Shown here: positions 10,941 to 53,952 of the stretch, piece by piece
Layout of the letters: the number at the start of each line of letters is the position of its first letter
Position numbering within the stretch: position 1 is the first letter of the stretch
Origin: Macrostomum lignano
Taxonomy: Eukaryota
Length of the DNA: 64,000 bases
NCBI GenBank assembly: GCA_002269645.1
Contig: NIVC01000896.1
Span: 124,001 to 188,000, forward strand
Reading direction: 5' to 3'
The notes under the pieces: generated by a model
Told to the model about the DNA's origin: nothing
Databases searched by the model: none
What the model saw: the letters and a program-made list of their open reading frames with translations, nothing else
Made by a program: the position numbers and the translations under genes

Positions 10941-28803
<17,863 letters not shown>

Positions 28804-31649: not shown

Positions 31650-31652
31650 ATG

Positions 31653-31665
31653 CTCTCCTTCTTTC
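31653..31665 (-). other. Polypurine tract (GAAAGAAGGAGAG)
   Basis: Purine run ending 3 nt upstream of the 3' LTR on the element strand. Confidence 0.85.
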
Positions 31666-31846
31666 AAAAAGTGTTCCACTCACTTTCTGCATTTTTCGTT
31701 GTGTTAAAAAAAGTTACGAGTATGAGTTCGACGAATTCTGATCGAATATTTGAACGAATAAATATTTGAGGAAATAAAAGTGGAAATTAAAATGAACTTA
31801 AGCAATGTCAATGTTTAAAAAAAAAACTATCTAAGAAAATCTGCAT

Positions 31847-34800
31847 TCAATGAGTATACACTTCACCAAAAAATTCTGGCGGGGCACGGGCCCTCTCACT
31901 TCGGCGCAATACAGGCTGTTCTGGATGCTCTGGAACATCAGCAGGGGCGCCGACCGGAGCGCCGACTGGGGCGCCGGCTGGGGCGCCGGCTGGGGCGCCG
32001 GCTGGGGCGCCGGCTGGGGCGCCGGCTGGGGCGCCGGCTGGGGCGCCGGCTGGGACGCCGTCAAATCTCAGGTCGTCCTCGTCAGGACTGTGCAGTTGCG
32101 CCGCTGGTTGCAATTGAGGTGCTGCAGCTGGACTGGCCGTGTTGCATGGCTTCAGGCGATTGAAATGCACCACCCTTCGCCGTCGTGCATTGGCCTCGTG
32201 CTGAATGCGGTAGGTGACGTCTGAGATCTGCTTTTTAACGCGCCATGGCCCAGTCCACCATCGATGAAATTTTTTCGGCTCTCGCCTCGCTTCAGCGCCG
32301 GATTGTGCAGCCAGACCAGATCGTTCTCGCTGAATGCCTCGCCGTGGCACCTCCTGTCGTACGCTGCCTTCTGGTGCAGTTGCGCTGCCTCCAAGTTTTG
32401 TCGCGCCCTCTCGTGCGATTTCTGCAGCCGGCTCCGCAGCTCGGCCACCCATTCACAAGGACGTTGCCTATCCGGCGCCAGACCTCCGTATGCCAAGTCC
32501 AGTGGTAGTCGCAGTTCCCGGCCGAAATGCATCGCCGAAGGTGTCTGACCAGTCGACTTGTGGACTGAAGTGCGGTAGCCCATCAGTGCAATCTGCAGAT
32601 GAAGATCCCAGTCTCGCTGATTCTCGTTCACCCATGCTCGCAGCAGCTGCACCAGTGTCCGGTTCATCCGTTCGCAACCGCCGTCTCCTTCAGGGTGGTA
32701 GCCTGTCGTCCGAGTCTTGTCGATTTTCAGCAGCCGCATCGTCTCTTGAAACAGCTGTGACTCCCAGTTCCGACCCTGGTCGGTGTGCACCGACTGCGGG
32801 ACTCCAAAGCGAGCCACCCACTCGTTGACAAACGTCCGGGCTGTGGTCTCAGCGTCTTGAGACGGCAGTGGAAAGGCCTCAGTCCACTTGCTGAAGGTGT
32901 CGATGACTACCAGGATGACTGAATTTCCACGATCGGTCCTCGGCAGGCCCACCATGAAGTCCATTTCCAGTCGCTGGCCAACGCTGCCGACCGCCATGCT
33001 CTGTAGAGGTGCCCGCCTGTGCTGGCCAGAATCTTTCAGTGTCGCGCATTCGAGGCACGCAGCACACCAGTCAGTCACATCTGCTGTCATTCCAGGCCAG
33101 TAGAGTCGCGCCCTGATCTTTTCAATGGTCTTCTGCGGTCCGCAGTGGCTGCCGCTCGTTCCAGCATGAGCTTCGACAAAAACATCGCGCTGTAGACTCT
33201 CTGGCACCAGCAGCTGCTGACAAAAGGCGCTGCCATCTTCGGATTCCCATCGGCGGCACAGCAGTCCGTTCACCAGTGTCAGCCGCTTAAACTCGGACAG
33301 CAGTTGCCGCTGCCGATTGCTCCAGCCGTCCGTCTCTGCCTTATCCGGTGGTTGACCATCTCGCAAGCAGTTCGCCAGCTTCTGCATGCACCGATCCTCT
33401 GCCTGTGCTCGTCGAATCGCGCTGTCGTCATTGAACTCGACAGCGAGCGCAGAGCCACTGCACAGGCAAGGTCCTTTTCGACACGGTCGCCGACTAAGTG
33501 CGTCTGCATTTCCATGTTTCTCGCCCTTGCGATACTCCGTCTGGTAGTCGAATTCGCTTAGCTTATCCAGCCACCGTGCCAGCTGACCATCGGGATCTCG
33601 AAAGCGCAGAAGATGGATCAGCGAGGCGTGATCAGTACGTAGTGTGAATCTTTTTCCTAACAAGTAGCTGCGATAGTGACCGACGAAGTGCACAATTGCC
33701 AGCAGCTCACGCCTCGTTGTGCAGTAATTTCTCTCTGCTTTGGACAGAATGCGACTGCCGTACGCCACCACCTGCGTCCTGCCACCACGGCGCTCTTGAA
33801 GAACTCCGGAGATGGCCACGCCAGAGGCATCGGTATCTAGCACGAACTCAGCGTCTTCTGCGAATGTCGGCATGATGAGGACTGGGCTGGAAGTAAGGCA
33901 CTGCTTTAGGCGATTAAATGCTGCTGAGCATTCGAGAGTCCAGCTGAAGGTCACGTCCTTTTGCGTTAGCTTGTACAGCGGTTCAGCAATCTCACTGTAG
34001 TTTTTAACGAAATGACGATAGTAGCCACATAACCCCAGGAATTGTCGCACTTCTGAACGATCTTCGGGCGTTGGCCACTCCTGTACTGCTTTCACCTTGT
34101 CCGGGTCAGTGGTCACGCCATCTTTTGAGATTCGAAAGCCAAGAAATGAGATCTCCTGATAGCACAAGTGGCACTTGGTCGGCTTCAACTTCAGGTTAGC
34201 GGTTCTGAATTTCTGCAACACAAGCTCAAGACGCCGCAGATGCTCCTCGAATCCTTTCGAAAAGATGACAACGTCGTCAAGAAATGACAGGCACACTTCC
34301 CATCGGAGGCCCTTCAGAACGAGTTCCATCAGCCTTGAAAACGTGGCAGGACCATTGCACACACCTTGCGGTAGTCTCTTGTACTGGAATAATCCTTGTG
34401 GCGCAGGAAATGCTGTTTTTGCGCGACTCTCTGAGTCCAGCATCACCTGGGTGTACCCGCTAGTGAAGTCGAGCGTTGAGAACATTGTGGATCCTGCGAG
34501 AGCATCGATCAGATCGCTGGTGTGAGGCAGTGGATGACTGTCTTTGACGGTCACGGAGTTGAGCAGTCTGAAGTCGTTCACGAAGCGCAAACTGCCGTCC
34601 TTCTTCTTCACCAGAATGACCGGGCTCGACCACGGAGAATTCGAAGGCTCTACGATGTCGTCTCTCACCATCTGCTCGACCATATCTGACACAGCTCGCT
34701 GGTTCGGCGGCGACAATCTACGAGGAGGCACTCTGATAGGTTTCGCCGACCCGGTGTCAATTTTGTGGTCAAGGAGTGAAGTGCAGCCCAGGTCGTTTGG

Positions 34801-35715
34801 ACTTTTCGAGAACACATCCTGGTACTGATGCAGAAGATCTTTGACACACTGAACTTGATTGGCTGTAAGATTTTTCTCATCAATGTGCACATTTGGTACA
34901 TACTCGGCGATTTGACCTTTCACTGTCTCAACTTGCATTGACAACTCTGCATCGGCACCATCTGACATCGGCTCAAAAGTCCCCAGTCTTGTTCCGGGGT
35001 AAAATGTATGCGGCTTGGTGTCCGTATTGACATAGTGAACAGCGATGAGTCCTCCTCGCAACACCGAGAGGCTGCGCGCTCCACACATGACCGTGGAGAT
35101 GTCCTTCGAATTGTCAGGCTCAAAAATGCCGCACTCACCATCAACAGCTGCATCTGACTCACTTGCCAATCTCGCTGGGAAGACGATTTCGTGACCAGCG
35201 GGCACGGTTGTCCTGTCTGCTACCTCAACGGCGAATACACAGGTGCTGGCTGCCGATGACTCCATTTTTACTTGCTGACCGCACACAGTGAGCGTTTGGC
35301 GATTGCAGTCGATGACGCAGCCACAGTTTGCCAGGAAATCTGCACCCAGCAAAAAATCCTTGGCCAGATTGTCGACAACTAAAACTCTTTGTCGAACCGT
35401 TGCCACACCGAAACTTAGCTGCACTTCCTGCCAACCACAGGCAGCCAAATAGTTAACGTCTGCCAGCTTCAACTGCACCGGAGTCGTCAAAGGCAGGAGC
35501 CTCTCATTCAGCTTGCGAAACAGGGAACTTGACATCAAAGACTGGGAACACCCAGTGTCAACTAGACAGCTGGCAGGGACACACATTGGCAGGATGCGAC
35601 AGTTTACCAGCATGTTGGCACCAGTGGCTGAGCAGGACACCTCTACGACTGGTTGCGCCGGGATTCTCACTTGCGGAACGGCACCCCGGCGGTCGCCGCT
35701 CCATCGAAGTTTCCC
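31847..35715 (-). CDS. pol: Pol polyprotein (protease, RT, RNase H, integrase), with one apparent 1-nt deletion near 32270
   Basis: LVDTGCS (protease), FVNDFRLLN and SFLDDVVIFS (RT), LDTDASG (RNase H), HAGTSGSH..CAACLEC and the LEMDF..HTDQGRNWES..ERMN DDE core (integrase). The C-terminus (KFHRWWTGPWRV..VVHFNRLKPC..LRRSERARAPP) continues in another frame after the T-run at 32270-32275. Confidence 0.93.
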
Positions 35716-36507
35716 GACTTCTGAGTGCAAAATCTTTGAACATGGCCCGGCTTACCGCACTTCCAGCATGTCACAACTCTGCGTCTGTCGCCGCTCTGAC
35801 GATGATCCTGGTCCTTTGACTCCCAGCGGCTGAGCTTGTTGGACAGCTCCTTCAGGGACCGTTGAATTCCGACTGCAAAGGCTTCGGGAACCTCAGCAGC
35901 TAGAGCCGTAGCAGTGCCTCCTTGCGACTGTATCGATTCCACGAATCGCGCTGTTTCAACTGTATCAGCGAATGTCGCCTTTGGCTGCATCTGCGTCTGC
36001 ATTCGCACAGCTGGGTCCCTCAATCCGGATAGAAACCGACCTTTGAGAAGCTCGTCCTTCGCTGTCACCGACGTCTCCTGCTCGGCACTTGCTTTCGTCT
36101 CCATCAGACTCGGGAAAGCGCGTTTGCCGCAACGATCAGGGCATCGGAATAGTCTGCAACCGACTGACCGTCCTTTTGAGTCAGATTGAAGAACTGCGCC
36201 TGCAGCTCAGCAGAGGATTTGATGGCCGAAATCGATTTTTCAGAGCCTTCTCAAAGTCGTCGTAGGACAGGGCAGCATCCAAATTGCTGGCCGCTTGATA
36301 TGATTTGTCGTCGAGGAATGACAGCAGAGCATTCTTGCGCTGATCCACAGGAAGAGATGATGCGAAATTGTTGAATCGTGCCAGCCAAAGTTCAAAGTCT
36401 TGTCCATGCTGGTATTGAGGCGGCCGCAAAAACATGTTGACAAAACGAGCTTGGGGCTGAGTCACCGCCACTGTAGGGCTCTCTGCACTGCCTTCATTTT
36501 CAGTCAT
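35667..36507 (-). CDS. gag: Gag with CCHC zinc knuckle, interrupted by two apparent 1-nt deletions
   Basis: ATG at 36507 (MTENEG). Adding one A at each of the T-runs 36218-36220 and 36123-36125 joins three frames into one protein ending with CWKCGKPGHVQRFC. Confidence 0.85.
35675..35715 (-). promoter_or_regulatory. Predicted -1 programmed ribosomal frameshift signal (G GGA AAC + 6-nt spacer + hairpin)
   Basis: The slippery heptamer at 35709-35715 is in the gag frame, and a -1 slip gives exactly the pol frame (GKLRWSGDRR). It is followed by the stem GGAGCGGC...GCCGTTCC (35702-35675). Confidence 0.8.
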
Positions 36508-36512
36508 AGCCG

Positions 36513-36524
36513 CCGCTGCCACCA
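36513..36524 (-). other. Primer-binding site TGGTGGCAGCGG (probably tRNA-Leu)
   Basis: One nt inside the 5' LTR; complementary to CCGCUGCCACCA, the 3' end of animal tRNA-Leu(AAG/UAG) as I recall it. Confidence 0.75.
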
Positions 36525-36525
36525 A

Positions 36526-36690
36526 TGTAAGAACAAGCGAAAACGAGAAATTGGCTTAAGGCGTAGACCGACTCTTGGCTGCCCAGGGCGCCAAGGCATT
36601 CACTTATATATTATCATTGTACAGCGAGCAAATGTACATAAGAGCTAGTGAACGTGCGCACACGCAATCAACTAAGCAAACCATCTTACA
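36526..36690 (-). repeat. 5' LTR
   Basis: Adjacent to the PBS; identical by eye to the 3' LTR. Confidence 0.97.
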
Positions 36691-38995: not shown

Positions 38996-40134
38996 AACCA
39001 GATTACCTAAAGTAGCTACTTGTTGACTAGGCAAATGATTCGCTTGAATAGTTGCAAAAATCCGAGTTTTTTACTTGTTTTATGCTTTGAGTTTGATTAG
39101 TAGTTTTCCTCATTGTAGTTGTTTGAATTTCAAGTTCGCTGTGTCATTTTAACAATAGAATGACTGTAGATAATCGATGCACCCCAAAGCCGGTAATTGC
39201 GTGACAATGTCTATAAAGAAATTATTCAAACGTGAATCAAGGACGGCGAGTTTACATTTTTACTCAGACATTAATGAAAGCAGTACAGCTTTTGACTGTA
39301 GAATCTTCCGTTCCTTGTCCCGAGTCTGAAGGTCACGAGAATTGTAGCCAGACTGCATTGCTTCAATTTTTTCTTGCTCCACTGATGCGGAAATCCTAAT
39401 GCTGTGCATTAACTCTGGGTAGATCCAATTCCTTGCGGAGGTCAGGAAGGGACAGCGTGAGCGGGGATTTTCTATCAAAAGCTTTGGCCAAAAAAGCATT
39501 TTTGATGCTGTCTAGACCGCGAAATAATGTGCTGTAACATTATAAACAAATATTTTTTCAGCATGATGCCTATGGCACTGGTACAGTAAATTCTCTCACA
39601 TGCTCACATTATTCATCTCACGCTCAGTCATCGTTCGCTAGTGACAGCTCCATTCTGAATTCTGATTGATTACGTTAAGCTCTGTATGCACGGGTTTAGT
39701 GTAAATCACTAAAATGTCTGTACGCGTCGCATGCACAGAGCGTTTTCACAAGACCTAAATGCATTTAATTTCGTTGATAAATAATTAGATACGTCCTGTG
39801 AAGTTTTGACGCTGTGATATTGTATGCTTAACTTTCAGCAATGTGAAATTTAGGTTTCATGAAACCCCGTCTGTTTTAGGCTAAATTTCTTGACGTCTCG
39901 AAATACTTATGGCCGAATTATGACTTAGCGGCCATGATCCTCCTATATAATAAAATCCTTTGGATTGTAATACATACAGAAAATGTTGAAAACTTGCTTT
40001 CAGCAGGTAGTCACTGCAATCTAAGTGCTTGAGCGGGCTAAGATTAGTAGAAACAGGAAATCGAGGCCAGCATCGTGCTACTTGGTCAACCATTAGAGTA
40101 GTATCATAAGAAAACTGTGCTTTATATTCACTTT

Positions 40135-40206
<72 letters not shown>
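40135..40206. repeat. (GATA)n microsatellite, left flank of the 272-bp array
   Basis: Read directly. Confidence 0.97.
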
Positions 40207-43200
40207 TAGATAGCGAGAAAGAGCGAGCGAAGCGAGCTCTTTCGAGCTTGCTTGCCGCAGCCAATCAAGCTGAATGCACGCACACAAGATCACCGGAAAC
40301 GATTAAGGCAGCTGGAAAGCCAATGGGCGCGGTAAGCGCTTTTATCCAGAGGAACTACCTGCTGGAACCAGCCTGCCGTTCGAAAATCAGACTACTCAAG
40401 TAGTGCAAAAGAGTGCGAGCAACTACCGAGAAATCTAATTTTCGTAACCGCTCCGGTGCAGGTCCTGGCAATAGATGGTAGATAGCGAGAAAGAGCGAGC
40501 GAAGCGAGCTCTTTCGAGCTTGCTTGCCGCAGCCAATCAAGCTGAATGCACGCACACAAGATCACCGGAAACGATTAAGGCAGCTGGAAAGCCAATGGGC
40601 GCGGTAAGCGCTTTTATCCAGAGGAACTACCTGCTGGAACCAGCCTGCCGTTCGAAAATCAGACTACTCAAGTAGTGCAAAAGAGTGCGAGCAACTACCG
40701 AGAAATCTAATTTTCGTAACCGCTCCGGTGCAGGTCCTGGCAATAGATGGTAGATAGCGAGAAAGAGCGAGCGAAGCGAGCTCTTTCGAGCTTGCTTGCC
40801 GCAGCCAATCAAGCTGAATGCACGCACACAAGATCACCGGAAACGATTAAGGCAGCTGGAAAGCCAATGGGCGCGGTAAGCGCTTTTATCCAGAGGAACT
40901 ACCTGCTGGAACCAGCCTGCCGTTCGAAAATCAGACTACTCAAGTAGTGCAAAAGAGTGCGAGCAACTACCGAGAAATCTAATTTTCGTAACCGCTCCGG
41001 TGCAGGTCCTGGCAATAGATGGTAGATAGCGAGAAAGAGCGAGCGAAGCGAGCTCTTTCGAGCTTGCTTGCCGCAGCCAATCAAGCTGAATGCACGCACA
41101 CAAGATCACCGGAAACGATTAAGGCAGCTGGAAAGCCAATGGGCGCGGTAAGCGCTTTTATCCAGAGGAACTACCTGCTGGAACCAGCCTGCCGTTCGAA
41201 AATCAGACTACTCAAGTAGTGCAAAAGAGTGCGAGCAACTACCGAGAAATCTAATTTTCGTAACCGCTCCGGTGCAGGTCCTGGCAATAGATGGTAGATA
41301 GCGAGAAAGAGCGAGCGAAGCGAGCTCTTTCGAGCTTGCTTGCCGCAGCCAATCAAGCTGAATGCACGCACACAAGATCACCGGAAACGATTAAGGCAGC
41401 TGGAAAGCCAATGGGCGCGGTAAGCGCTTTTATCCAGAGGAACTACCTGCTGGAACCAGCCTGCCGTTCGAAAATCAGACTACTCAAGTAGTGCAAAAGA
41501 GTGCGAGCAACTACCGAGAAATCTAATTTTCGTAACCGCTCCGGTGCAGGTCCTGGCAATAGATGGTAGATAGCGAGAAAGAGCGAGCGAAGCGAGCTCT
41601 TTCGAGCTTGCTTGCCGCAGCCAATCAAGCTGAATGCACGCACACAAGATCACCGGAAACGATTAAGGCAGCTGGAAAGCCAATGGGCGCGGTAAGCGCT
41701 TTTATCCAGAGGAACTACCTGCTGGAACCAGCCTGCCGTTCGAAAATCAGACTACTCAAGTAGTGCAAAAGAGTGCGAGCAACTACCGAGAAATCTAATT
41801 TTCGTAACCGCTCCGGTGCAGGTCCTGGCAATAGATGGTAGATAGCGAGAAAGAGCGAGCGAAGCGAGCTCTTTCGAGCTTGCTTGCCGCAGCCAATCAA
41901 GCTGAATGCACGCACACAAGATCACCGGAAACGATTAAGGCAGCTGGAAAGCCAATGGGCGCGGTAAGCGCTTTTATCCAGAGGAACTACCTGCTGGAAC
42001 CAGCCTGCCGTTCGAAAATCAGACTACTCAAGTAGTGCAAAAGAGTGCGAGCAACTACCGAGAAATCTAATTTTCGTAACCGCTCCGGTGCAGGTCCTGG
42101 CAATAGATGGTAGATAGCGAGAAAGAGCGAGCGAAGCGAGCTCTTTCGAGCTTGCTTGCCGCAGCCAATCAAGCTGAATGCACGCACACAAGATCACCGG
42201 AAACGATTAAGGCAGCTGGAAAGCCAATGGGCGCGGTAAGCGCTTTTATCCAGAGGAACTACCTGCTGGAACCAGCCTGCCGTTCGAAAATCAGACTACT
42301 CAAGTAGTGCAAAAGAGTGCGAGCAACTACCGAGAAATCTAATTTTCGTAACCGCTCCGGTGCAGGTCCTGGCAATAGATGGTAGATAGCGAGAAAGAGC
42401 GAGCGAAGCGAGCTCTTTCGAGCTTGCTTGCCGCAGCCAATCAAGCTGAATGCACGCACACAAGATCACCGGAAACGATTAAGGCAGCTGGAAAGCCAAT
42501 GGGCGCGGTAAGCGCTTTTATCCAGAGGAACTACCTGCTGGAACCAGCCTGCCGTTCGAAAATCAGACTACTCAAGTAGTGCAAAAGAGTGCGAGCAACT
42601 ACCGAGAAATCTAATTTTCGTAACCGCTCCGGTGCAGGTCCTGGCAATAGATGGTAGATAGCGAGAAAGAGCGAGCGAAGCGAGCTCTTTCGAGCTTGCT
42701 TGCCGCAGCCAATCAAGCTGAATGCACGCACACAAGATCACCGGAAACGATTAAGGCAGCTGGAAAGCCAATGGGCGCGGTAAGCGCTTTTATCCAGAGG
42801 AACTACCTGCTGGAACCAGCCTGCCGTTCGAAAATCAGACTACTCAAGTAGTGCAAAAGAGTGCGAGCAACTACCGAGAAATCTAATTTTCGTAACCGCT
42901 CCGGTGCAGGTCCTGGCAATAGATGGTAGATAGCGAGAAAGAGCGAGCGAAGCGAGCTCTTTCGAGCTTGCTTGCCGCAGCCAATCAAGCTGAATGCACG
43001 CACACAAGATCACCGGAAACGATTAAGGCAGCTGGAAAGCCAATGGGCGCGGTAAGCGCTTTTATCCAGAGGAACTACCTGCTGGAACCAGCCTGCCGTT
43101 CGAAAATCAGACTACTCAAGTAGTGCAAAAGAGTGCGAGCAACTACCGAGAAATCTAATTTTCGTAACCGCTCCGGTGCAGGTCCTGGCAATAGATGGTA

Positions 43201-43491
43201 GATAGCGAGAAAGAGCGAGCGAAGCGAGCTCTTTCGAGCTTGCTTGCCGCAGCCAATCAAGCTGAATGCACGCACACAAGATCACCGGAAACGATTAAGG
43301 CAGCTGGAAAGCCAATGGGCGCGGTAAGCGCTTTTATCCAGAGGAACTACCTGCTGGAACCAGCCTGCCGTTCGAAAATCAGACTACTCAAGTAGTGCAA
43401 AAGAGTGCGAGCAACTACCGAGAAATCTAATTTTCGTAACCGCTCCGGTGCAGGTCCTGGCAATAGATGGTAGATAGCGAGAAAGAGCGAG
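40206..43491. repeat. 272-bp tandem satellite array 1 (12 apparently identical units + 22 nt)
   Basis: The period is exactly 272 (40207+12x272=43471), and the ORF track repeats identically every 272 nt. Confidence 0.98.
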
Positions 43492-43499
43492 AAAGAGAA

Positions 43500-43737
<238 letters not shown>

Positions 43738-44733
43738 CGTTTGTCTGCGGGACGTTTGCCAGCCAACATTATGTCAGTGAGTGAAAAATTTGATTCACTC
43801 AGTTTTTTAGTCCAACTTTTTGACGGCTATTCGCATGTATAAATGTTCGAAAACAAAATCTATACAAATGATGCAGTTCATCAATCTAACATCTAGTTTA
43901 ACAACAATTTCTTTGAATTTGAAAATATTATAAAGTTTAATTTTGGCAGTTTTGTATCGCTTTGCTCAGTTTGTGATGTTTGCTCAATCACTCAGTTGTT
44001 CAGATGTTCAGATGCTCAGATGCTCAGATGTTCAGGTGCTCAGATGCTCAGATGTTCACTTCACTCAGTTTGAAGGAAGACACGCAAATTTAAACGGGAA
44101 TCTGCAGCGAGCCAAGTTTTGAGCAAATAAAAGAACTGCTAAACGATAATTCTGGCTTCTATATTTCCCAGTTCATTGGGAGATCCAAAAGTAAGCGAAT
44201 TAATTCCAATGCAGCTTGTCAAGTCCACGCTGTCACGGCCAAACTTCGTTAAGCAGAGTTTGGCTTTTGAGTTAAGTACGAGTATGTATAGGCGAGACTA
44301 AGCCAATATCATTATGGATGTCTCAGTATTTTCCCATTTAGCTTGTAAACACTTAGCTTGTTTGGCCACTGAGATGGAAAGGGCCATTCCATGGCATACA
44401 TAGGCATCAACTGTGACAATGGAAACTCCTATTTTGTATTTTTACCTTTCTATTTAGGCAGACAAGAGCAATAACTTCAATAAGCCTGAACAGTAGTTTG
44501 TTGGTAATCTGTATATTTAATAGCAGTAGTAGGGAGGGAGGTGGAATTAGATTAGTGCTGTGTCCACAGTTTTCAAATGCAAGTACATGTAAGCCTAGAA
44601 AGGGCAACTTCTTTAACCAATTGCCGCCTGCAAATGTCCGGCTGGCGAACGTCCCGCAGGCAAACGTCGGCTGGCAAACGTCGGCTTTAAAACGTCGGCT
44701 GGCAAACGTCCGGCAGGCAAATTCCGTAGACCC
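43738..44733. mobile_element. Foldback-like non-autonomous DNA element remnant between two (GATA)n tracts
   Basis: 43738-43770 is an ~85% inverted copy of 44633-44666. Tandem CAAACGTCGGCTGG-type subterminal repeats lie at 44661-44712, an internal (CAGATGYT)n 8-mer run at ~44000-44057, and (GATA)n resumes at ~44735. Confidence 0.5.
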
Positions 44734-44739
44734 AGATAG

Positions 44740-44770
<31 letters not shown>

Positions 44771-47053
44771 AATAGATAGAAATATGAGAGTTTAGTTCAG
44801 ACTAGTTTCATTCAGCATGCTTATCTTTTTTGCTAAGTACTTTTGAAGGCGAGGATCAAGGTAGCTCTAAATGAATCTTCTCTGCAATTAATCAAAATCA
44901 TGTACTTTTTTGGCAACGTGCAGTCTGTAGGTTGCGACCTCCTGGTTGACTGCTGGTGGACTAGATAAGGGAGTTAGGGAGAATCACTAGAGATAAATGG
45001 GAAGGGGGCAGATAAAGTGCAGAAAGATTGGAATGGAGAAGCGCTCGTATCTCGCGCTCAGCAGGCAGAGGATTGCTAGGCCCAGTCAGCATGCCCGCAC
45101 CCCCCTCTTAGCCCTTTGTCACGTTGCCATGCCATGCGGAATCCCAATCGCTCGCAAGGATAACTGAGCAGCAAGCTGCGCATCGCCAGCTCTCTGGAGG
45201 CGGCCTCTCTTCGAATGGCGCATGATTATAATCCGATAGATAGATAGAGGGAGAGAGAAAGTCAGAGGCAGCCGTCTCTCCGACCGTGATTTAGCATTTG
45301 GTTCAGTCGGCGGCCTGTTTGCGTCTGTGGAAGAAATGCTGAAAGCGGTCCAATTCAATCGGCGCCAAATAGGGCCGCCATCCAGACGCCAAGGGCCGTT
45401 TTTGCTCCTTCCATTTCACTTGCACGCGCGAGACGGAAAGTTTTTTTTGAGGCTACTGCCGGTGGCCGAGCAAACCAGTTGGCCCTAATGAGGTTTTGGG
45501 CTTGCTAGTAGACTCTGCAGGCTTGAGAAGCACTGGAGGGTGGGAATCAGACTTCGCCTTCTGGGTCATTTTTGGCTAAACTGAGCTCCCGGAAGGTTCT
45601 GTCTAAGCGACCTATCAGCTGTTGTTGGCGTCCACGGAGCTTCATTAACAACTCTGAGGCTCCATTATTGACTAGCCTCAAAGACAGGGCAGCAAGTTTT
45701 GAATAGAAAATTATGCACATAGTCTGATGGACAGAATTCTGAATTGGGAGTTGGCAGGCGGGTTAGAATGAGGAAGCGAGAGGGAGGGAAAATGGAGGAA
45801 GAGTTCAGGGCACAGGCGCATTGCTGAAGAAAAATTCAATGCAGGAATCAATGGTCTTGGTAATTACACAGGGAGGAGCTACTCAGCGCCTCCCATTCCA
45901 CCTCGGCCCCCGACTCCGCCCCAGCTCTCCATCAAATTTCCCTCAAAACCCAGCACAGCTCCACCAGACCATTGCATTTGGTCTGGTGGGTAGCAGAGCG
46001 TGTCGATGAAGAGTTGCTGGGAGCAGCTCCAAGGAGCTGCCTTCATCTAATAGAAGAGACACTGGAATCCTCAGTCCCCCTCACTCTGAAAGAAGCTCAA
46101 CTATATTTCATGCACAGTGTTTTGACCATTTCTCTTTGATGTCTTCTAACCGGCGCGAACCGACTAGAGGCTTAATTATGTGGTTGTTGTTGCATTGTTG
46201 CTAGGCCGAGCATACTTAATACTATAGTTAGTTCGAGTCTTAGCCCTGTGCAAGCTGACTTAGACTTGTTTAGTAGTTTGACCATTCGGGAGCTCTAATC
46301 AGTCCAAAGAAAAAAGCAAATGTCTTCTATTCTTCACAGCATCAAAAATAGTTACATGTGATAGACTGTTGGCAAGGAAGTGATAATACGCGCCTTAGAG
46401 CTTGTATAAACAAAAGTACATGTAAGAAAAGCCAAAGTAGTGCCAAGCAGCGGTGTAAATCAACGAAGGCATCAATTTCTTTTGTCTGACTGTCACTCGT
46501 TGTAAAATTACAAATAGAATAGTTATTTCTATGTTTTGTATAAAGATTTTATACATTACGTATTACATTAAGACTAGTCAAATATCTATCCACGATCATT
46601 TTTCGTCTTAATATGCGCCCACGTCTGTACTTTAAACTAGGCTGGCTATGATGACAGGCAGGATTTTCTCTCCACGAACTTCATCGAACTAAGCACTCAA
46701 CTCTGCGTTGAAAAATCACTTGAAAAAGCCAGGTGTCAGTAGGGTTTTCACGCCAGTGCCTTTCTCGCGCTTAGCCAGTTTTTAAGGCATCGATTTTCGA
46801 CTTTCTAAAAAACTTTGACGCATTTTGCAAGCACGTGACTAACAATGCACTACCGAGGGCTATTAACACCACTATTAATGTACTGTATACCTCTTAGAAA
46901 ATTGTGTACCTTACTAGGTAACACTAATATTTCATTTCAAGAGAGTTTTCAGACATTATTCACGCTTGTAAAACGATTTTTTGTTATGCTTGGGTCTCAA
47001 TCGGCTGCGCATTTTTAGCACAAAACGCGAATGTCGCCTTCTATTCTATCTAC

Positions 47054-47056
<3 letters not shown>

Positions 47057-47102
<46 letters not shown>
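47057..47102. repeat. (CT)n microsatellite
   Basis: Read directly, ~23 units. Confidence 0.95.
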
Positions 47103-47104
<2 letters not shown>

Positions 47105-47864
47105 CTTAGCGCGGCCCTGTAATTTTCGGGTTGGTTGCCTCACCCTTTGTCCAATTGCCTGGGACAGAATGGGCCGACCGTCTCGCAACAGAGATCCCCC
47201 ATCCCAGCCTCGTCTAGCGTTGCGCCTCGCGTCCCCAGCCACCCCACTCCGCCCCTGACGCACAGTCTCTGTCCTCTTTCTCTGCCTGACCTATCCTCTC
47301 AGTCTCTCCCTATAGCACCGCATCCTACAGTCCTCAGACACCCAGACGCAGAGGAGAAGAGCGCTCTCATACTTAACCGTAGCAGTCATACCCAGACGAT
47401 TGTAGATTTTAATCGATCTCCAATATAGCCGCGACTGCAGCAGAGTTCATAAAGAAACGCAATTATTTTTTCGCATTTTTTTCAACCGCTGCAATTATTT
47501 TTTTGTACGACCGACACACCGGCATCATAATTGGCTGGCGACAGAATCTTGGCGACATTGAGGCAGCTGAATAATTCATCCGCTTAACTGGTTCCGCTCT
47601 GTCAAAGCGCTTGTTAAAGGAACTTGCCGGCTGCTAGCCAGCGGAATAGACGCCATAGCTGCATAGGCCTTTTGTTTCGCTCTTAATTGTAAAATTTTCT
47701 TAGAGGAGCAAAGCGGGAAGAAAAACACTAAAGGGACAGAAAGTGAAAGAAACAGATAAATAGTCCGCTTCAAAGCGCCGAAGCCAGAAAAGCCGGTTTA
47801 ATTTTTTTGGTGCCATGGTGAATTAAGCGCTGCTGTTTGAAGAAACGCAGAAACATAGCTTGTA

Positions 47865-48878
47865 ATGTCGCAGCACAACTTAAACAACAACAAGTCATCG
47901 CAGCATCCAGAGGTCCTAGAAGAGAACTCTGATGAGGAAGAGCAGAACCAACAGACAAAATTGGGAATGATCAATGAAAATGAAAATGAAGGCGCCGACG
48001 AGAGAGCAGGCGAAGGCGGTCACTACTGCCGACACGAATTCAACACTATATTCTTTGGCCGAAGAGACAGCCCCCGCTACCGTTTAACTGACAATCGGGG
48101 CATCGGCACTATTGACTATGATCCGTACAAGAGCATGCAGCAGGAGAACGAAGAGAAAATTGCTAGACAGCTTCGACTTCAACTGGTGGTTGGCGGCATC
48201 ATGGTGGTCGTATTTGTTACGACAATAGCAGTAGTCATCTCGATGTCTATGGCTCGCGAAGAGGTCAAGGAGTACATTAAAATAGAGCCGCGCAATCCGC
48301 AGGGCGGTAGCGTGATTTGGCTCGACCGGCGCAATGAAGACGACTTGGCGGCGCTACTGGCCCGCATCAACGGTGAGCTGGACGAATACGAGATCCGTCG
48401 ATGGTATCCCCGACTTCGCAAGGCCGGTCGACGGGCCAAAGACTGCCGGACTTCCTTTCCAAAACCTGGTCTGGACGTGTGTGTACCGCAGTTGGAAATA
48501 TTTTCTAGCTGCAATTCTTACAACGCCTTTGGCTACGTTGTCGGAGATCCATGCATCCTGCTGAAGGCTGGACCAGCGCTCACAAAAAACTACAGCACCG
48601 ACCTTTGGCTGGACTGTCGAGCGACAATCGATTCAAACAATGCGGAGATCCCATTGAGGTTCTATCCGCAGCTAACCTACCTGAACAGAACCTACGCCTA
48701 TTTCCCGCGATACTTTTTTCCTTACCAACCGGACAGCTCGTTCTACCTGCCGCCTTTGGCTATGATACAAATAATTAATCCGCCTAGCGACCAGAGCTTT
48801 CGCATCAACTGCTCTCTGGCTAATGAAGAGTTCAAGAACTTGACTACGCTTGCCACGCTGCAGATATTGTTTCTCTAA
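47865..48878 (+). CDS. ATP1B-like: Na+/K+-ATPase subunit beta-like protein (type II membrane protein), intronless CDS, 337 aa
   Basis: A single transmembrane segment (LVVGGIMVVVFVTTIAVVISMSM) precedes six ectodomain Cys in the beta-subunit pattern. Motifs: CNSYNAFGYVVGDPCILLK, LRFYP, FPRYFFPY, YLPPLAMIQI, INC; N-glycosylation sequons NYS, NRT, NCS, NLT. Confidence 0.88.
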   Translation: MSQHNLNNNKSSQHPEVLEENSDEEEQNQQTKLGMINENENEGADERAGEGGHYCRHEFNTIFFGRRDSPRYRLTDNRGIGTIDYDPYKSMQQENEEKIARQLRLQLVVGGIMVVVFVTTIAVVISMSMAREEVKEYIKIEPRNPQGGSVIWLDRRNEDDLAALLARINGELDEYEIRRWYPRLRKAGRRAKDCRTSFPKPGLDVCVPQLEIFSSCNSYNAFGYVVGDPCILLKAGPALTKNYSTDLWLDCRATIDSNNAEIPLRFYPQLTYLNRTYAYFPRYFFPYQPDSSFYLPPLAMIQIINPPSDQSFRINCSLANEEFKNLTTLATLQILFL

Positions 48879-49710
48879 CAATGTTCGGCCGATAAAGTTT
48901 GTTTAACTCGTGTTTTTTTTTTAATTTTTAGGCTGCGCATAATAATGATGCTCATATTTTCTGTACTTTTATTATAGATGTGTTCAATTGTGCCTCCGGT
49001 GATTTTCCTTGCTCGCCTTTTCGCCGAATGGCAGGCTGTCTATTGAAATAACCGAGCAATGAAAATTAGCTTTCCTCTGAGCTATACTCCAACACTTCTT
49101 AGCACAATAATTGATTGTTATCTCAAGTATCATTAATTTCTACTGCATACAGCCTAACTGCCATTGTCCCGTTTTGTCCAAATCGCTTTGCAAACTAATC
49201 GCATGCAATGGTTAATCTGTAAATTAGTATCAAACAAAACGATCTCTGCAGTGTGCAGACTCTTCATGCATGATGAAAGTGAATAGTTAACGTCCAGCAA
49301 AGAATTCTTTTCTCTCATCATTTCCTCAATTAACAAATGCTTGTCAAGTCTGCGTTTCCTTCTATAATGACCTTCTAATGAGCTGTTTCATTGCCGAAGC
49401 TACATGCAAAAATCTGTCAAACTAATAGACTAATTACAAAACAACAGCTCTTTGGGAGTTGTACCATTCCAAGAGTCTAGTTTACATCAATATTTTATTA
49501 AATTATCCCTCTATTAACGCAATGTGGCGTGTTCTGAGAGTAACGGTTATTTGCAGAAAAGGAAAAGAGTTACAAGAGTAGCAACCAAAAACTACTTCGA
49601 CTCATTATCGGTCGGTCTTCATCACGAAATTTCAACTTCACATTAGTGCAAGAGACAGAAACAATCAATACTTATTAATAAAATGACTATGTACTTTTAA
49701 CGATGAACGC

Positions 49711-51207
49711 AGGCTGGTTCCAGCAGGTAGTTCCTCTGGATAAAAGCGCTTACCGCGCCCATTGGCTTTCCAGCTGCCTTAATCGTTTCCGGTGATCTTG
49801 TGTGCGTGCTTTCAGCTTGATTGGCTGCGGCAAGCAAGCTCGAAAGAGCTCGCTTCGCTCGCTCTTTCTCGCTATCTACCATCTATTGCCAGGACCTGCA
49901 CCGGAGCGGTTACGAAAATTAGATTTCTCGGTAGTTGCTCGCACTCTTTTGCACTACTTGAGTAGTCTGATTTTCGAACGGCAGGCTGGTTCCAGCAGGT
50001 AGTTCCTCTGGATAAAAGCGCTTACCGCGCCCATTGGCTTTCCAGCTGCCTTAATCGTTTCCGGTGATCTTGTGTGCGTGCTTTCAGCTTGATTGGCTGC
50101 GGCAAGCAAGCTCGAAAGAGCTCGCTTCGCTCGCTCTTTCTCGCTATCTACCATCTATTGCCAGGACCTGCACCGGAGCGGTTACGAAAATTAGATTTCT
50201 CGGTAGTTGCTCGCACTCTTTTGCACTACTTGAGTAGTCTGATTTTCGAACGGCAGGCTGGTTCCAGCAGGTAGTTCCTCTGGATAAAAGCGCTTACCGC
50301 GCCCATTGGCTTTCCAGCTGCCTTAATCGTTTCCGGTGATCTTGTGTGCGTGCTTTCAGCTTGATTGGCTGCGGCAAGCAAGCTCGAAAGAGCTCGCTTC
50401 GCTCGCTCTTTCTCGCTATCTACCATCTATTGCCAGGACCTGCACCGGAGCGGTTACGAAAATTAGATTTCTCGGTAGTTGCTCGCACTCTTTTGCACTA
50501 CTTGAGTAGTCTGATTTTCGAACGGCAGGCTGGTTCCAGCAGGTAGTTCCTCTGGATAAAAGCGCTTACCGCGCCCATTGGCTTTCCAGCTGCCTTAATC
50601 GTTTCCGGTGATCTTGTGTGCGTGCTTTCAGCTTGATTGGCTGCGGCAAGCAAGCTCGAAAGAGCTCGCTTCGCTCGCTCTTTCTCGCTATCTACCATCT
50701 ATTGCCAGGACCTGCACCGGAGCGGTTACGAAAATTAGATTTCTCGGTAGTTGCTCGCACTCTTTTGCACTACTTGAGTAGTCTGATTTTCGAACGGCAG
50801 GCTGGTTCCAGCAGGTAGTTCCTCTGGATAAAAGCGCTTACCGCGCCCATTGGCTTTCCAGCTGCCTTAATCGTTTCCGGTGATCTTGTGTGCGTGCTTT
50901 CAGCTTGATTGGCTGCGGCAAGCAAGATATCTACCATCTATTGCCAGGACCTGCACCGGAGCGGTTACGAAAATTAGATTTCTCGGTAGTTGCTCGCACT
51001 CTTTTGCACTACTTGAGTAGTCTGATTTTCGAACGGCAGGCTGGTTCCAGCAGGTAGTTCCTCTGGATAAAAGCGCTTACCGCGCCCATTGGCTTTCCAG
51101 CTGCCTTAATCGTTTCCGGTGATCTTGTGTGCGTGCTTTCAGCTTGATTGGCTGCGGCAAGCAAGCTCGAAAGAGCTCGCTTCGCTCGCTCTTTCTCGCT
51201 ATCTACC
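49711..51207. mobile_element. 272-bp tandem satellite array 2 (~5.6 units, inverted relative to array 1) flanked by a 19-bp TSD
   Basis: Reverse complement of the array-1 unit except for one fixed SNP. TACTTTTAACGATGAACGC is duplicated at 49692-49710 and 51208-51226, and one unit has a 34-bp deletion at 50927. Confidence 0.95.
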
Positions 51208-53952
51208 TACTTTTAACGATGAACGCTTCCACGCGAAAAATGTTAACATGGAAAACAAATGATGCAAAGATAAGCAATCTATCCATCACATACCTGCATA
51301 GCTTTTTCCAGTTCAAGTTTTTCCGCTAATGGGCTTAAAATGAAGATGGACAAGTATTTTTTATAGCTTTTTCTATCGTTTTCCTGTCTAGAATGGTTTT
51401 GAGGAGGAAGATATCCTGCCAGTACTTTCAAAGTAATGCCTTTTGGTAAAATGTAAAACGTGTTTTGCTATCGAATTTTGAAACTATGAAATTGTGAAAC
51501 AGTAATACATATACGAGGAAGCTGTAAAAATAGCTAATGTACTAGGCAAGAATGCGGAAGACCAAAGTTATGTTAAATTAAAATAATAATGGTGTCCGGT
51601 TCCGTAATCTAGGCAATTTAATGGACGTCGTCCGTCTTAAATTTTGGAATTGGGAAAACAATAAACGATTCCTATTAGTAATTGTTTAATATGCTTTTAT
51701 TGTGGGATTTGAATGAAAAATATTAGCATAACTTTTATCTCCCATAGGGGTGAATAAAAAATCTTCACGATGGGAGAGTCATTCGGAGCAAACTCAAAGA
51801 AAGCTGATGGTTATAGCCTTTGCATCCATAAGCTGGACCAAATAATAACTTTTGGGTTTAAACAAGTCCAATCCAGTTTGGTCTGCGTCAGCGTACTTAA
51901 ACGCAAAGAAAGGCATCCGTCTACTAGGGAGTGAGGGAGTAGAAATGTTGGAGAAAACGTAATTTTAGAATTTTCCACAGCCTTTCCGCAAGTAGCGATT
52001 GCAGACTTAGTCACGCCATCGGTTTTGGCTTAGGATTTGTCACTCAACCGTATCTCTAACGTCTCGGCTCTGCAGTGGGCAGTCCTCATCTTTCCCTGAT
52101 GATGAGGAGAGGAGAGGAGAGAGAGAGAGAAACTAGACAGAATTTCTTGCGTGATTTGAAAAAAATAGTTACTGAGATCGATCTTGTTTCTACTAGGTGG
52201 CATTGCATGGGAGTCAAGCTTGAAGTGAGAAAATATAAGATGTGCTGGGCGGAGGTAGAACAAGGAGAAAATCCCAACTTACAAACGAGCCATCGAAGCG
52301 CGGGCTCTAAGCTCACGGAAGCGAAGAGGAATATTTCTGCTTGGATTGGCCCAATAATTTTGACAGGAGGTTATTAAAATTTCTAGCTTTCATTATTAAG
52401 CCAGATTAAACTACAATTGATTGAAATTGAAAATAAAGCTGAAACAGCTTTTAGTCACATTACCCAGGTCAAGGTAAAAGTAGTGCTAATCTGTACTTAT
52501 ATTTTCATGGCGTGGACTTGAATTTCCGGTGTGCATCGTCCCGAGCAGTCTAGTATTTGCTCACAATCTTGTGCTTCCTAAGCCTGCCACGCCACGGTGA
52601 GTGGTAATCTGAATACTTGCCCTATACTAACACCCCCTTCGCTTGCAGCATTATCGACTTACCCTAACTGAGTTGGTCTTCAACTTTTCAAAGCTGATAT
52701 TTCCGGTTCACTGAACCTTTGGAATTCAGTTCGATTCATAAATTTACTTAAGGCTTGGCGATAGCTGGGAGGTGCTCAAGTTATAAAAAGTACTAATAGT
52801 CTAATAGTCTACTAATAGGCAATATCGTTGGCTAACGCTGTAAATGCGGTCCGCATCATAATTGGATGAGCAGCAGATTTACCCTGCCTATTAGTATGCA
52901 AATAATTGCTATGCTAATATAGGCCCCTGTTTGCTCAAACAGAGCAGATTAGATCGCTTCTACGGCTTGCTTAAACCTATTAAAAAGAGATTCACTATAG
53001 CCAAATGCTTTGCAAAATGATAAATTAGCTCAATTAATTCTCTTGATTCGGTTGATTAGCAGTGGCGATCAAGTGCAGCTCAAGATCAATCTAAATGTCA
53101 AAGGATGAACCTGGCTTTGAAAGCGCCTAAAAGGACTGCCGCGCGCCATTCAGGGACATCAAAATCTATGCTTGAAATCTGGTCGGCTACTAGATTATAT
53201 ACGAGGCGTATAGTAAGATTAAACATGGAAAATTACCATTGTATTAAAACCCGATGTGTTTGCAGGCAAAATGGTAACAGAATTCAACCGAATGAAGATC
53301 GAATAAATCCCAGCACTAATCGTTGAGCGAAAATTCTCTAAATCCTGACTTGCAGTTAAGTAGATAATCAGTGGGCTTAGCTCCTGACAGAGACAGATTG
53401 CCGGTTTGAACTCAAGGAGCAGCGGGATGGCAAGCTTTATCAAACCGAATGCCGAAGTCAGAAAGAGACAGACAAATATGAGTAGGTTTCATTAAATCAT
53501 CGATAATTTCCTGAGATAGAAATTTTCAACAATTTACTGAGCAGTGATCAAATTTTGAGCATTTAATAAACATTTGAGAACGTGCTTTGTATAGTATAAT
53601 ATTTGGTCACCAAAAGAGGCATTTGATGCTACTAAAAAGTTATCTTGCTAGTAGTAATGCCTGTGCGTTTCTTGTGAGTTAAGAAATTTCACAACTTTTA
53701 AGAAGCTCAAGGCAGTTAATAGAAAGTAGTTTATTTATTTAAAAATTATCTCTTGAGCCAAGCTATCAAATTTATTTCGAAAATAGTCGCAATCAATTTT
53801 GAGAGTAAGCCAATACAAAAACAGATTTGAATCGACAAGCATGCATTTAAACAGTTTTGCCAAGTGGTTTGCAAATAGGAAATGTCATTGGGAAGAGAAG
53901 CAAATAAAAGTAAGAACAACACGAAGCAAGAAGTCCAAGATAGGCTTGAAGT

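What the first reader, a model, noticed from the sequence alone, without database searches (positions are those of the whole stretch)
49692..51226. A satellite concatemer inserted as a mobile unit with a perfect 19-bp TSD (top candidate for an undescribed system)
Seen: TACTTTTAACGATGAACGC flanks 1497 bp of pure tandem units with no credible protein. The right end (...TCGCTATCTACC) is in the same register as the left end of array 1, while the opposite ends differ; here it is truncated mid-unit with GC/GAACG microhomology to the TSD. Known: a long TSD, one fixed end and one truncated end with microhomology are hallmarks of target-primed reverse transcription, and non-LTR retrozymes are 150-400-bp tandem units spread via multimeric or circular RNAs, normally carrying a ribozyme. 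Inference: a non-autonomous retro-satellite mobilised by a LINE or Penelope-like RT. With no canonical hammerhead, it may use an unrecognised processing motif.
Basis: partly seen in the sequence, partly recalled or inferred. Interest (0 to 1): 0.75.

Follow-up and report, generated by a model that had tools for sequence, protein, structure and literature searches.

The report
Satellite repeat block inserted as unit
A 1.5-kb block of identical 272-bp tandem repeats sits between two perfect copies of a 19-bp host sequence in an animal genome, so it was inserted as one piece. The likeliest route is copying from RNA, as in known tandem retroelements, but a local DNA-copying accident from a sister array 6 kb away is not excluded.

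Summary
TACTTTTAACGATGAACGC occurs exactly twice (49692-49710 and 51208-51226), flanking 1497 bp of 272-bp units with no ORF over 68 aa. A second array (40206-43491, opposite strand, 12 units) lies inside a (GATA)n microsatellite. Each array is internally identical, and the two differ at one fixed base.

Array 2's right end (...CGCTATCTACC) and array 1's left end coincide within about 1 nt. Array 1's end is ambiguous over about 8 nt, because the unit is microsatellite-like there. Array 2's left end is mid-unit, with GC (or GAACG-GC) microhomology.

No hammerhead, HDV-like fold, any Rfam family, tRNA-like promoter, or LINE/Penelope gene was found in the window. No other copy turned up in any searchable collection.

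My best reading (about 0.45) is a non-autonomous retroelement inserted by target-primed reverse transcription as a head-to-tail concatemer. This resembles non-LTR retrozymes and hammerhead-less Penelope-like (Naiad/Chlamys) non-autonomous elements, which also target microsatellites and give variable duplications.

The main rival (about 0.27) is a local replication template switch that copied array 1.

"Undescribed system" is an overstatement. At most this is a new variant of a known kind, and the source genome is needed to decide.

The parts
49692..49710 (+). Left copy of the 19-bp target-site duplication, TACTTTTAACGATGAACGC
   Evidence: Exact match with 51208-51226. Only two matches in the window even with 3 mismatches allowed; 0/100 shuffles give two. 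Not part of the 272-bp unit.
51208..51226 (+). Right copy of the 19-bp target-site duplication
49711..51207 (+). Array 2, the inserted concatemer: 170-nt 5'-truncated unit + 3 full units + one 239-nt unit + 1 full unit. Putative sense strand is +.
   Evidence: TRF period 272, 99-100% matches. Units are identical to each other. Composition 170+816+239+272 = 1497.
49711..49880 (+). 5'-truncated first unit. The junction shows GC (or GAACG-GC) microhomology with the end of the duplication.
   Evidence: Read directly from the sequence.
50697..50935 (+). Unit with a 34-nt deletion plus 1-nt filler (breakpoint after 50926). The deletion removes almost exactly the predicted 37-nt hairpin near the unit's 3' end.
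   Evidence: TRF period 239; sequence; hairpin at unit positions 229-265.
51196..51207 (+). Shared ('fixed') end ...CGCTATCTACC. It consists of a hairpin followed by a 7-nt single-stranded, (CTAT)-like tail.
40206..43491 (-). Array 1: 12 units (the last lacks its final C) plus a 23-nt partial unit at 43469-43491. All units are identical. It differs from array 2 at one fixed base (A versus T in the + sense of array 2).
40135..40205 (.). (ATAG)n microsatellite abutting the shared end of array 1.
43492..43737 (.). Degenerate then perfect (AGAT)n microsatellite abutting the other end of array 1. Array 1 therefore lies inside one microsatellite.
49684..49694 (+). Target motif CTATGTAC spanning the inferred first-strand nick (49691|49692). 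It resembles the element's own end CTATCTAC and the (CTAT)n target of array 1.
   Evidence: 7/8 match. About 3% of random 20-nt windows score as well, and the test is post hoc.
50033..50096 (+). Two inverted CCAAT boxes (ATTGG) in each unit (here the unit 49881-50152), 120 and 61 nt upstream of the next unit boundary. Possibly an internal promoter.
   Evidence: Motif positions 153 and 212 of the unit. Function is inferred only.

Best explanation
The 272-bp unit is a non-coding, non-autonomous retroelement. An RNA of + sense (as in array 2) ends at ...CUAUCUAC(C). This end follows a stable hairpin and a short single-stranded, (CUAU)-like tail.

A reverse transcriptase/endonuclease supplied in trans nicks the bottom strand at a CTAT-like site: CTATG|TAC for array 2, (CTAT)n for array 1. 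It primes cDNA synthesis on the RNA 3' end. A Penelope-like GIY-YIG enzyme is the best fit; a LINE enzyme is possible.

A head-to-tail concatemer is then built in one of two ways: serial end-to-end template jumping onto further monomer RNAs, or going round a circular monomer. Synthesis stops mid-unit, and the cDNA end is joined to the top strand through GC/GAACG(G)C microhomology. A second nick 19 nt downstream, followed by fill-in, gives the 19-bp duplication.

Shown: the insertion, the duplication, the junction sequences, the absence of coding capacity and of any known ribozyme, and the strand-biased predicted RNA structure.

Inferred: the RNA intermediate, the enzyme, the nick order and the way the concatemer was made.
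For: - A perfect 19-bp duplication of sequence foreign to the unit. Staggered nicks in target-primed reverse transcription give duplications of this size and of variable length (PMC8557442, PMC9977147).
- The Ty3/gypsy element in the same window gives only a 4-bp duplication.
- One end is common to both arrays within about 1 nt. The other end differs and is mid-unit with microhomology. The common end joins the target without microhomology.
- Both targets are CTAT-like at that junction. Penelope-like elements show a microsatellite insertion bias (PMC8557442).
- The predicted sense strand folds better than its complement. Linear unit: -106.1 kcal/mol, z -5.0, against -93.3, z -3.7. Circular: -99.5, z -4.4, against -87.0, z -2.7. 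The unit ends are unpaired.
- Head-to-tail concatemers from template jumping are produced by retroelement reverse transcriptases in vitro and in cells (PMC11371274).
- Non-autonomous Chlamys elements give multicopy head-to-tail insertions without hammerheads (PMC8557442).
- Retrozyme circRNAs are proposed to give multimeric cDNAs (PMC7761336).
Against: - Only two arrays are known, 6.2 kb apart and inverted. No decayed fragments occur elsewhere in 64 kb. That fits a local event better than a dispersed family.
- No LINE or Penelope reverse transcriptase or GIY-YIG domain is in the window.
- No ribozyme, poly(A) signal or tail, Pol III box or Rfam family explains how a defined RNA end would be made.
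- The 'fixed end' of array 1 is ambiguous over about 8 nt, and the target-similarity test is post hoc (p about 0.03).
- The pattern of identical units with one fixed difference between arrays can come from ordinary concerted evolution. It does not require a monomer template.
- No transcript evidence is available.
Confidence: 0.45

Rival explanations
1. Local DNA copying, by a replication template switch (FoSTeS/MMBIR) or by ectopic synthesis-dependent repair. A nascent strand at 49710 switched by GC/GAACG(G)C microhomology to array 1, which lies 6-10 kb away on the other strand. It copied about 5.6 units towards array 1's microsatellite border. It then returned 19 nt upstream of where it left, creating the 19-bp duplication. 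No mobile element is involved.
For: - The two arrays are the only copies in the window. They are close, inverted and differ at 1 base per 272.
- There is microhomology at the departure junction.
- Array 2 ends at the position where array 1's unit-specific sequence stops at the microsatellite, a plausible stalling point.
- An imperfect 8-nt homology, CTATCTAC/CTATGTAC, lies at the return site.
- No reverse transcriptase partner or ribozyme was found.
Against: - The return junction has 0-1 nt of terminal microhomology. The product (…CTACC|TAC…) is not what annealing at the 8-nt homology would give.
- A neat 19-bp duplication is only one of many outcomes of a template switch.
- The fixed A/T difference requires later homogenisation of a whole array.
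- The last base before the target is C, as in internal units. It is not T, as at array 1's terminus.
Confidence: 0.27
2. DNA circle route. A monomer or oligomer of the satellite was excised as extrachromosomal circular DNA and amplified by rolling-circle replication. The linear concatemer was then captured at a staggered chromosomal break whose 19-nt overhangs were filled in.
For: - Every unit within an array is identical.
- Array 1 is an almost integral number of units inside a microsatellite that is homologous to the unit's CTAT-like segment. This is what a single crossover of a circle would give.
- eccDNA-mediated spread of satellite arrays is the standard model (PMC7719264, PMC5844308).
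Against: - In that model the flanking duplications are 2-10 bp and are motifs shared by satellite and target (PMC7719264). Here the 19-mer is absent from the unit.
- A documented de novo alpha-satellite insertion had a deletion and no duplication (PMC8662618).
- Nothing explains a 19-nt staggered break or the shared end.
Confidence: 0.13
3. The arrays are severely 5'-truncated copies of a larger autonomous retroelement (LINE or Penelope-like) whose 3' region consists of this tandem repeat. The satellite is then not an independent element.
For: The evidence is the same as for the best explanation: fixed 3' end, variable 5' end and a long duplication. Some Chlamys Penelope-like families carry internal tandem repeats (PMC8557442).
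Against: Array 1 shows 3.3 kb of units with no non-satellite element sequence at its 5' end. No reverse transcriptase of that kind is in the window.
Confidence: 0.07
4. An artefact or coincidence: either a mis-assembly, or a chance 19-bp repeat next to an array that grew in place.
For: Perfectly identical units can result from assembly collapse or polishing.
Against: - A chance exact 19-mer pair precisely at both array borders is very unlikely.
- One unit carries a private deletion.
- The flanks are unique sequence.
Confidence: 0.03

Closest known systems
Non-LTR retrozymes of animals (Cervera & de la Pena 2020, PMC7229834; PMC7761336)
   Same: Non-coding tandem units in the 150-450 bp range. 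Arrays run from dimers to tens of units, dispersed in the genome. Duplications, when present, are longer than 4 bp. The predicted RNA is highly self-paired, and multimeric cDNA is the proposed intermediate.
   Different: The defining type I hammerhead is absent. There is no CUGANGA core on either strand and no Rfam hit even at E<=10. GC is 51%, against the usual <50%. No RNA data are available.
Non-autonomous Penelope-like elements of the hammerhead-less Naiad/Chlamys clade (e.g. MRC1, Chlamys-N; PMC8557442, PMC9977147)
   Same: Multicopy head-to-tail insertions, frequent 5' truncation, variable-length target duplications, insertion into microsatellites, and no hammerhead.
   Different: Membership rests on 3'-end similarity to an autonomous element with reverse transcriptase and GIY-YIG domains, and none could be found or searched for here. 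Known microsatellite targets are (TA)n, (CA)n and (C)n, not (CTAT)n. The unit here is much shorter than typical elements of this kind.
Stringent-type LINE/SINE pairs (3' stem-loop plus short tandem-repeat tail recognised by the partner reverse transcriptase; from general knowledge, e.g. UnaL2/UnaSINE1)
   Same: A hairpin followed by a short repeat-like single-stranded tail at the fixed end. A long duplication, and 5' truncation with microhomology.
   Different: No Pol III promoter or tRNA/5S/7SL-like head. Insertion is as a concatemer rather than a monomer.
eccDNA-mediated dispersal of satellite arrays (alpha satellite, TCAST, 1.688; PMC7719264, PMC5844308)
   Same: Short satellite arrays in euchromatin, abrupt junctions, and array 1's near-integral unit number inside a homologous microsatellite.
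   Different: The flanking repeats in that model are 2-10 bp homologies shared with the satellite. Here a 19-bp stretch of pure target sequence is duplicated.
Templated insertions from replication template switching (FoSTeS/MMBIR; from general knowledge)
   Same: A nearby inverted donor, junction microhomology, and a short duplication at the acceptor.
   Different: One junction lacks microhomology. The end coincides with an element-specific position.

Membership tests
Non-LTR retrozyme | Short (about 150-450 bp) non-coding units in tandem | tested here: met
   272-bp units; no ORF over 68 aa.
Non-LTR retrozyme | A type I hammerhead ribozyme in every unit | tested here: not met
   No Rfam match at gathering score or at E<=10 on the array or on a dimer. 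No CUGANGA core on either strand.
Non-LTR retrozyme | Expression as monomeric linear and circular RNA | not testable with these tools
   No transcript data. Only predicted folding is available.
Non-LTR retrozyme | Target duplications longer than 4 bp where visible; GC below 50% | tested here: inconclusive
   The 19-bp duplication meets the first part. GC is 51.5%, slightly above the stated range.
Non-autonomous Penelope-like element | Head-to-tail multicopy or partial-tandem insertion with 5' truncation | tested here: met
   Array 2 is a 170-nt truncated unit followed by five more units. Array 1 is a 23-nt partial unit followed by 12 units.
Non-autonomous Penelope-like element | Variable-length target duplication from staggered GIY-YIG nicks | tested here: inconclusive
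   One 19-bp duplication. The second insertion lies in a microsatellite, where a duplication cannot be read.
Non-autonomous Penelope-like element | Insertion bias for microsatellites | tested here: inconclusive
   Array 1 lies in (CTAT)n. Array 2's target has only a CTATGTAC motif, p about 0.03 post hoc. Two sites only.
Non-autonomous Penelope-like element | 3'-end similarity to an autonomous element encoding RT plus GIY-YIG | not testable with these tools
   No such ORF in the window. The source genome and its relatives are absent from the searchable collections.
SINE | Internal Pol III promoter derived from tRNA, 5S or 7SL; poly(A) or simple-repeat tail | tested here: not met
   ARAGORN found nothing, Rfam found nothing, and there is no A-tail. 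Only array 1 is followed by (TATC)n, which is also present on its other side.
eccDNA/short-homology satellite insertion | Flanking direct repeat of 2-10 bp that is a motif shared by satellite and target | tested here: not met
   The 19-mer is not in the unit. Only GAACG(G)C is shared. Criterion taken from PMC7719264.
Helitron/Helentron-borne satellite (pearl-type) | No target duplication; non-repeat left and right element arms around the array | tested here: not met
   The duplication abuts the units directly on both sides.
Foldback or other DNA transposon | Terminal inverted repeats bounded by a short fixed-length duplication | tested here: not met
   Array 2 has no inverted termini. The duplication encloses array 2 alone, not the inverted pair 40206-51207.
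LTR-retrotransposon-dependent element (plant-type retrozyme, TRIM) | LTRs, PBS, PPT and a 4-5 bp duplication | tested here: not met
   None of these is present. The resident Ty3/gypsy element makes a 4-bp duplication, CACC.

The most novel reading that the evidence does not exclude
The 272-nt unit is a retrozyme-like satellite RNA that lacks every known self-cleaving motif. It is cut at CUACC|AUCUAUU by an unrecognised ribozyme or a dedicated host nuclease. It is then reverse-transcribed into concatemers and inserted at CTAT-like sites. That would be a new class of ribozyme-independent (or new-ribozyme) 'retro-satellite', showing directly how a satellite array can be born at a new locus in one step.
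Probability: 0.1. Interest if true: 0.8.

Novelty: new variant of a known kind. Interest (0 to 1): 0.45.

Why it matters
How satellite arrays reach new chromosomal sites is a long-standing question, and the usual answer (DNA circles plus short homology) rests on weak junction evidence. Here a young array still carries an intact 19-bp duplication of pure target sequence. That shows a whole concatemer can be inserted in one step at staggered nicks. If the genome-wide census confirms a fixed 3' end and variable duplications, this would extend the retrozyme and Penelope-dependent class to hammerhead-less satellites. It would also give a clean system for testing whether reverse transcriptases seed satellite arrays. 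If only these two arrays exist, it is instead a tidy example of a local templated insertion, and of modest interest.

Tried and rejected
- Known RNA families: Rfam at gathering score on the whole window, and at E<=10 on the array and on a dimer, gave nothing.
- Hammerhead core regex on both strands: none, apart from one relaxed C.GA.GA hit of no significance.
- HDV-like double-pseudoknot descriptor: two adjacent hits that merely reuse the long hairpin. They are not at the unit boundary, and shuffles give 0.75 sites on average. Rejected.
- tRNA-like or SINE origin: none.
- Coding capacity: ORFs of at most 68 aa, with no homologue in 5.8 billion proteins.
- Other copies of the unit:
  - exact-product look-ups: nothing;
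  - two metagenome scans: nothing;
  - one viral scan: nothing;
  - one prokaryote-genome scan gave two 20-26-nt matches in bacterial MAGs, as expected by chance, with no further similarity.
- Host identification: the best IQCH relatives are only about 50% identical. The best relative of the resident Ty3/gypsy is 66% identical and lies on a TARA Oceans contig. So the host is a poorly sampled, possibly marine, animal, and no species-specific literature could be used.
- Partner enzyme: Pfam on all stop-free stretches of at least 90 aa found only host genes and one Ty3/gypsy element.
- Foldback-transposon reading of the inverted array pair: rejected, because the duplication encloses array 2 only.
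- Priming on a circular RNA by annealing of the nicked target: rejected, because the primer end GTA would pair so as to give ...CTATCTACTTTT, not the observed ...CTATCTACCTACTTTT.
- 'Identical units with one fixed difference prove a monomer template': rejected as proof, since fast concerted evolution gives the same pattern.


Full report
**What is there**

The window comes from an animal genome. It holds:
- a PKD/REJ/WSC receptor gene;
- a RUN/PH_RBD/TBC gene;
- a single-exon Na/K-ATPase beta-like ORF;
- an IQCH gene;
- one intact Ty3/gypsy element.

The closest IQCH relatives are only about 50% identical. The closest relative of the Ty3/gypsy element is on a TARA Oceans contig. The host is therefore a poorly sampled, possibly marine, animal.

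The 19-mer TACTTTTAACGATGAACGC occurs exactly twice, at 49692-49710 and 51208-51226. This never happened in 100 shuffles. The repeat cannot be extended by a single base on either side.

Between the two copies lie 1497 bp made only of a 272-bp unit. A second array of the same unit lies on the opposite strand at 40206-43491. It has twelve units plus a 23-nt partial unit and is embedded in a (GATA)n microsatellite on both sides. No other fragment of the unit exists in the 64 kb.

**Fine structure**

I take the unit as ATCTATTGCC...CGCTATCTACC, that is, cut at the end the two arrays share. Array 2 is then:
- a 170-nt 5'-truncated unit;
- three full units;
- a 239-nt unit;
- one full unit.

The 239-nt unit lacks 34 nt and has one filler base. 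The missing stretch is almost exactly a predicted 37-nt hairpin that sits 7 nt from the unit's end.

All other units within an array are identical. The two arrays differ at a single position, which is fixed in every unit of each array. I first read this as a sign that each array came from one monomer template. However, fast concerted evolution within short arrays gives the same picture, so I do not count it for either side.

The unit is 51.5% GC with no CpG depletion. It has two inverted CCAAT boxes 120 and 61 nt upstream of the next unit boundary, and no poly(A) signal.

**Junctions**

On the right, the array ends ...CGCTATCTACC and runs straight into the duplicated TACTTTT with no microhomology.

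On the left, the duplication ends ...GAACGC and the array starts AGGCTGG. In the unit this is preceded by ...GAACGGC. That is 2 nt of clean microhomology, or 6 of 7 with a 1-nt gap.

Array 1 ends, in the same orientation...CGCTATCTAC followed by (TATC)n. But the unit continues C-ATCTAT, which is itself nearly (CTAT)n. Array 1's end cannot be placed better than within about 8 nt, so the coincidence is worth roughly p = 0.03-0.05 rather than 0.01.

The target of array 2 carries CTATGTAC across the inferred first nick. This resembles the element's own end CTATCTAC and the (CTAT)n target of array 1. About 3% of random windows do as well, and the test is post hoc.

**What it is not**

- It encodes nothing. 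ORFs are at most 68 aa, and there is no relative among 5.8 billion proteins.
- It matches no Rfam family at any threshold I could set.
- It has no hammerhead core on either strand.
- It fits an HDV-like descriptor no better than shuffled sequence does.
- It is not tRNA-like.
- The duplicated 19-mer is not part of the unit. This rules out the usual 'short shared homology' duplication of the DNA-circle recombination model, in which the repeats are 2-10 bp and belong to both partners (PMC7719264).
- A Helitron-type carrier would have no duplication and would have element arms.
- A foldback transposon formed by the inverted array pair would be duplicated outside both arrays, not around array 2 alone.
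- An LTR-type integrase gives 4-5 bp. The resident Ty3/gypsy shows CACC.

**Most likely mechanism (confidence about 0.45)**

This is insertion by target-primed reverse transcription of a non-autonomous element.
1. The + strand of array 2 is the sense strand.
2. An enzyme supplied in trans nicks the bottom strand between 49691 and 49692.
3. It starts cDNA at the RNA's 3' end, ...CUAUCUAC(C).
4. It makes a head-to-tail concatemer and stops mid-unit.
5. The end is joined by microhomology, and a second nick 19 nt away gives the duplication.

Three points fit this model. The predicted sense strand is the better-folding RNA: -106.1 kcal/mol, z -5.0, against -93.3, z -3.7. The circular fold is -99.5 against -87.0. 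The unit ends are single-stranded next to a hairpin.

Such reverse transcriptases do build head-to-tail tandems by template jumping (PMC11371274). Rolling reverse transcription of circular monomers is the published model for retrozymes (PMC7761336). Priming on a circle by annealing of the nicked target does not reproduce the observed junction, so I favour a linear RNA with a defined end.

A Penelope-like enzyme fits best, for three reasons:
- these elements give variable duplications, partial tandems and microsatellite targeting;
- the Naiad/Chlamys clade lacks hammerheads;
- its non-autonomous derivatives make multicopy head-to-tail insertions (PMC8557442, PMC9977147).

The RNA intermediate, the enzyme and the concatemer step are all inferred. 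No reverse transcriptase of this kind is in the window.

**Main rival (about 0.27)**

This is a local replication template switch, or ectopic repair synthesis, copying array 1. The donor is 6-10 kb away and inverted, and nothing else in the window carries the unit. The departure junction has microhomology. Array 2 ends where array 1's unit-specific sequence meets the microsatellite, a likely stalling point.

Against it:
- the return junction has no usable terminal microhomology, and the product is not what annealing at CTATCTAC/CTATGTAC would give;
- the last base is the C of internal units rather than the T at array 1's terminus;
- a clean 19-bp duplication is only one of many outcomes.

Lesser rivals are:
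- capture of a rolling-circle-amplified DNA circle at a staggered break (about 0.13);
- truncated 3' ends of a larger retroelement (about 0.07);
- artefact or chance (about 0.03).

**Comparison with known kinds**

It works like a non-LTR retrozyme or a non-autonomous Penelope-like element. It fails the defining test for retrozymes, since there is no hammerhead. The defining test for Penelope dependence (a shared 3' end with an autonomous element) could not be run. I therefore do not file it as a member of either family. If the retro model holds, it is a new variant of that known kind, not a categorically new system.

**What could not be done**

The unit was not found by any of the following:
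- exact-product look-ups;
- a six-frame chimeric protein query;
- two metagenome scans;
- a viral scan;
- a prokaryote scan, which gave chance 20-mers only.

Without the source genome, the key discriminator is out of reach. That discriminator is whether many unlinked arrays share this end and carry their own duplications.

Noticed in passing
window 31485-36690 (- strand): An apparently intact, very young Ty3/gypsy LTR retrotransposon. It has two 165-bp LTRs that are 100% identical (TG...CA) and a 4-bp duplication, CACC. Its 1192-aa ORF carries protease, RT, RNase H and integrase domains. The closest relative (66%) is on a TARA Oceans metagenome contig.
   Followed up: partly
window 43738-44721: A roughly 1-kb segment bounded by inverted repeats (CGTTTGTCTGCGGGACGTTTGCCAGCC at the left; 14-15-bp GCAAACGTCCGGCTG tandem copies at the right). 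It is itself flanked by (AGAT)n on both sides (43496-43737 and 44734-44780). It looks like a second insertion into the same microsatellite that holds array 1, which suggests the microsatellite predates both.
   Followed up: partly
window 49881-50152 (each unit), unit positions 153 and 212: Two inverted CCAAT boxes (ATTGG), 120 and 61 nt upstream of the next unit boundary. The boundary reads CC|A. This geometry is typical of an NF-Y-dependent Pol II promoter and would place a transcription start at the unit boundary.
   Followed up: no
window 50926/50927: The only within-array variant is a 34-nt deletion with a 1-nt filler. It excises almost exactly the predicted 37-nt hairpin near the unit's end, as if a polymerase had skipped the hairpin.
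   Followed up: partly
window 11150-12372, 16843-17411, 17720-18020, 26818-27331: Several large minisatellites (29-, 21-, 23- and 32-39-bp units) and an (ACTA)75 microsatellite lie within the span of the RUN/PH_RBD/TBC gene (about 12.9-29.4 kb, - strand). The genome seems unusually rich in tetranucleotide and minisatellite arrays.
   Followed up: no
window 47865-48878 (+): A Na/K-ATPase beta-subunit-like protein is encoded in a single 337-aa ORF lying between the two inverted satellite arrays. It may be an intronless gene or a retrocopy.
   Followed up: no
window 39995-40011: An 11-nt exact match (CAGCAGGTAGT) to the unit lies about 190 bp outside array 1, in the opposite orientation. About two such matches are expected by chance in this region, so I treat it as chance.
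   Followed up: yes
L001 2880-2899; L002 501-526: 20-26-nt matches to the unit occur in two bacterial MAG contigs. About one such match is expected in 596 Gb, and nothing further is shared. They are chance matches.
   Followed up: yes
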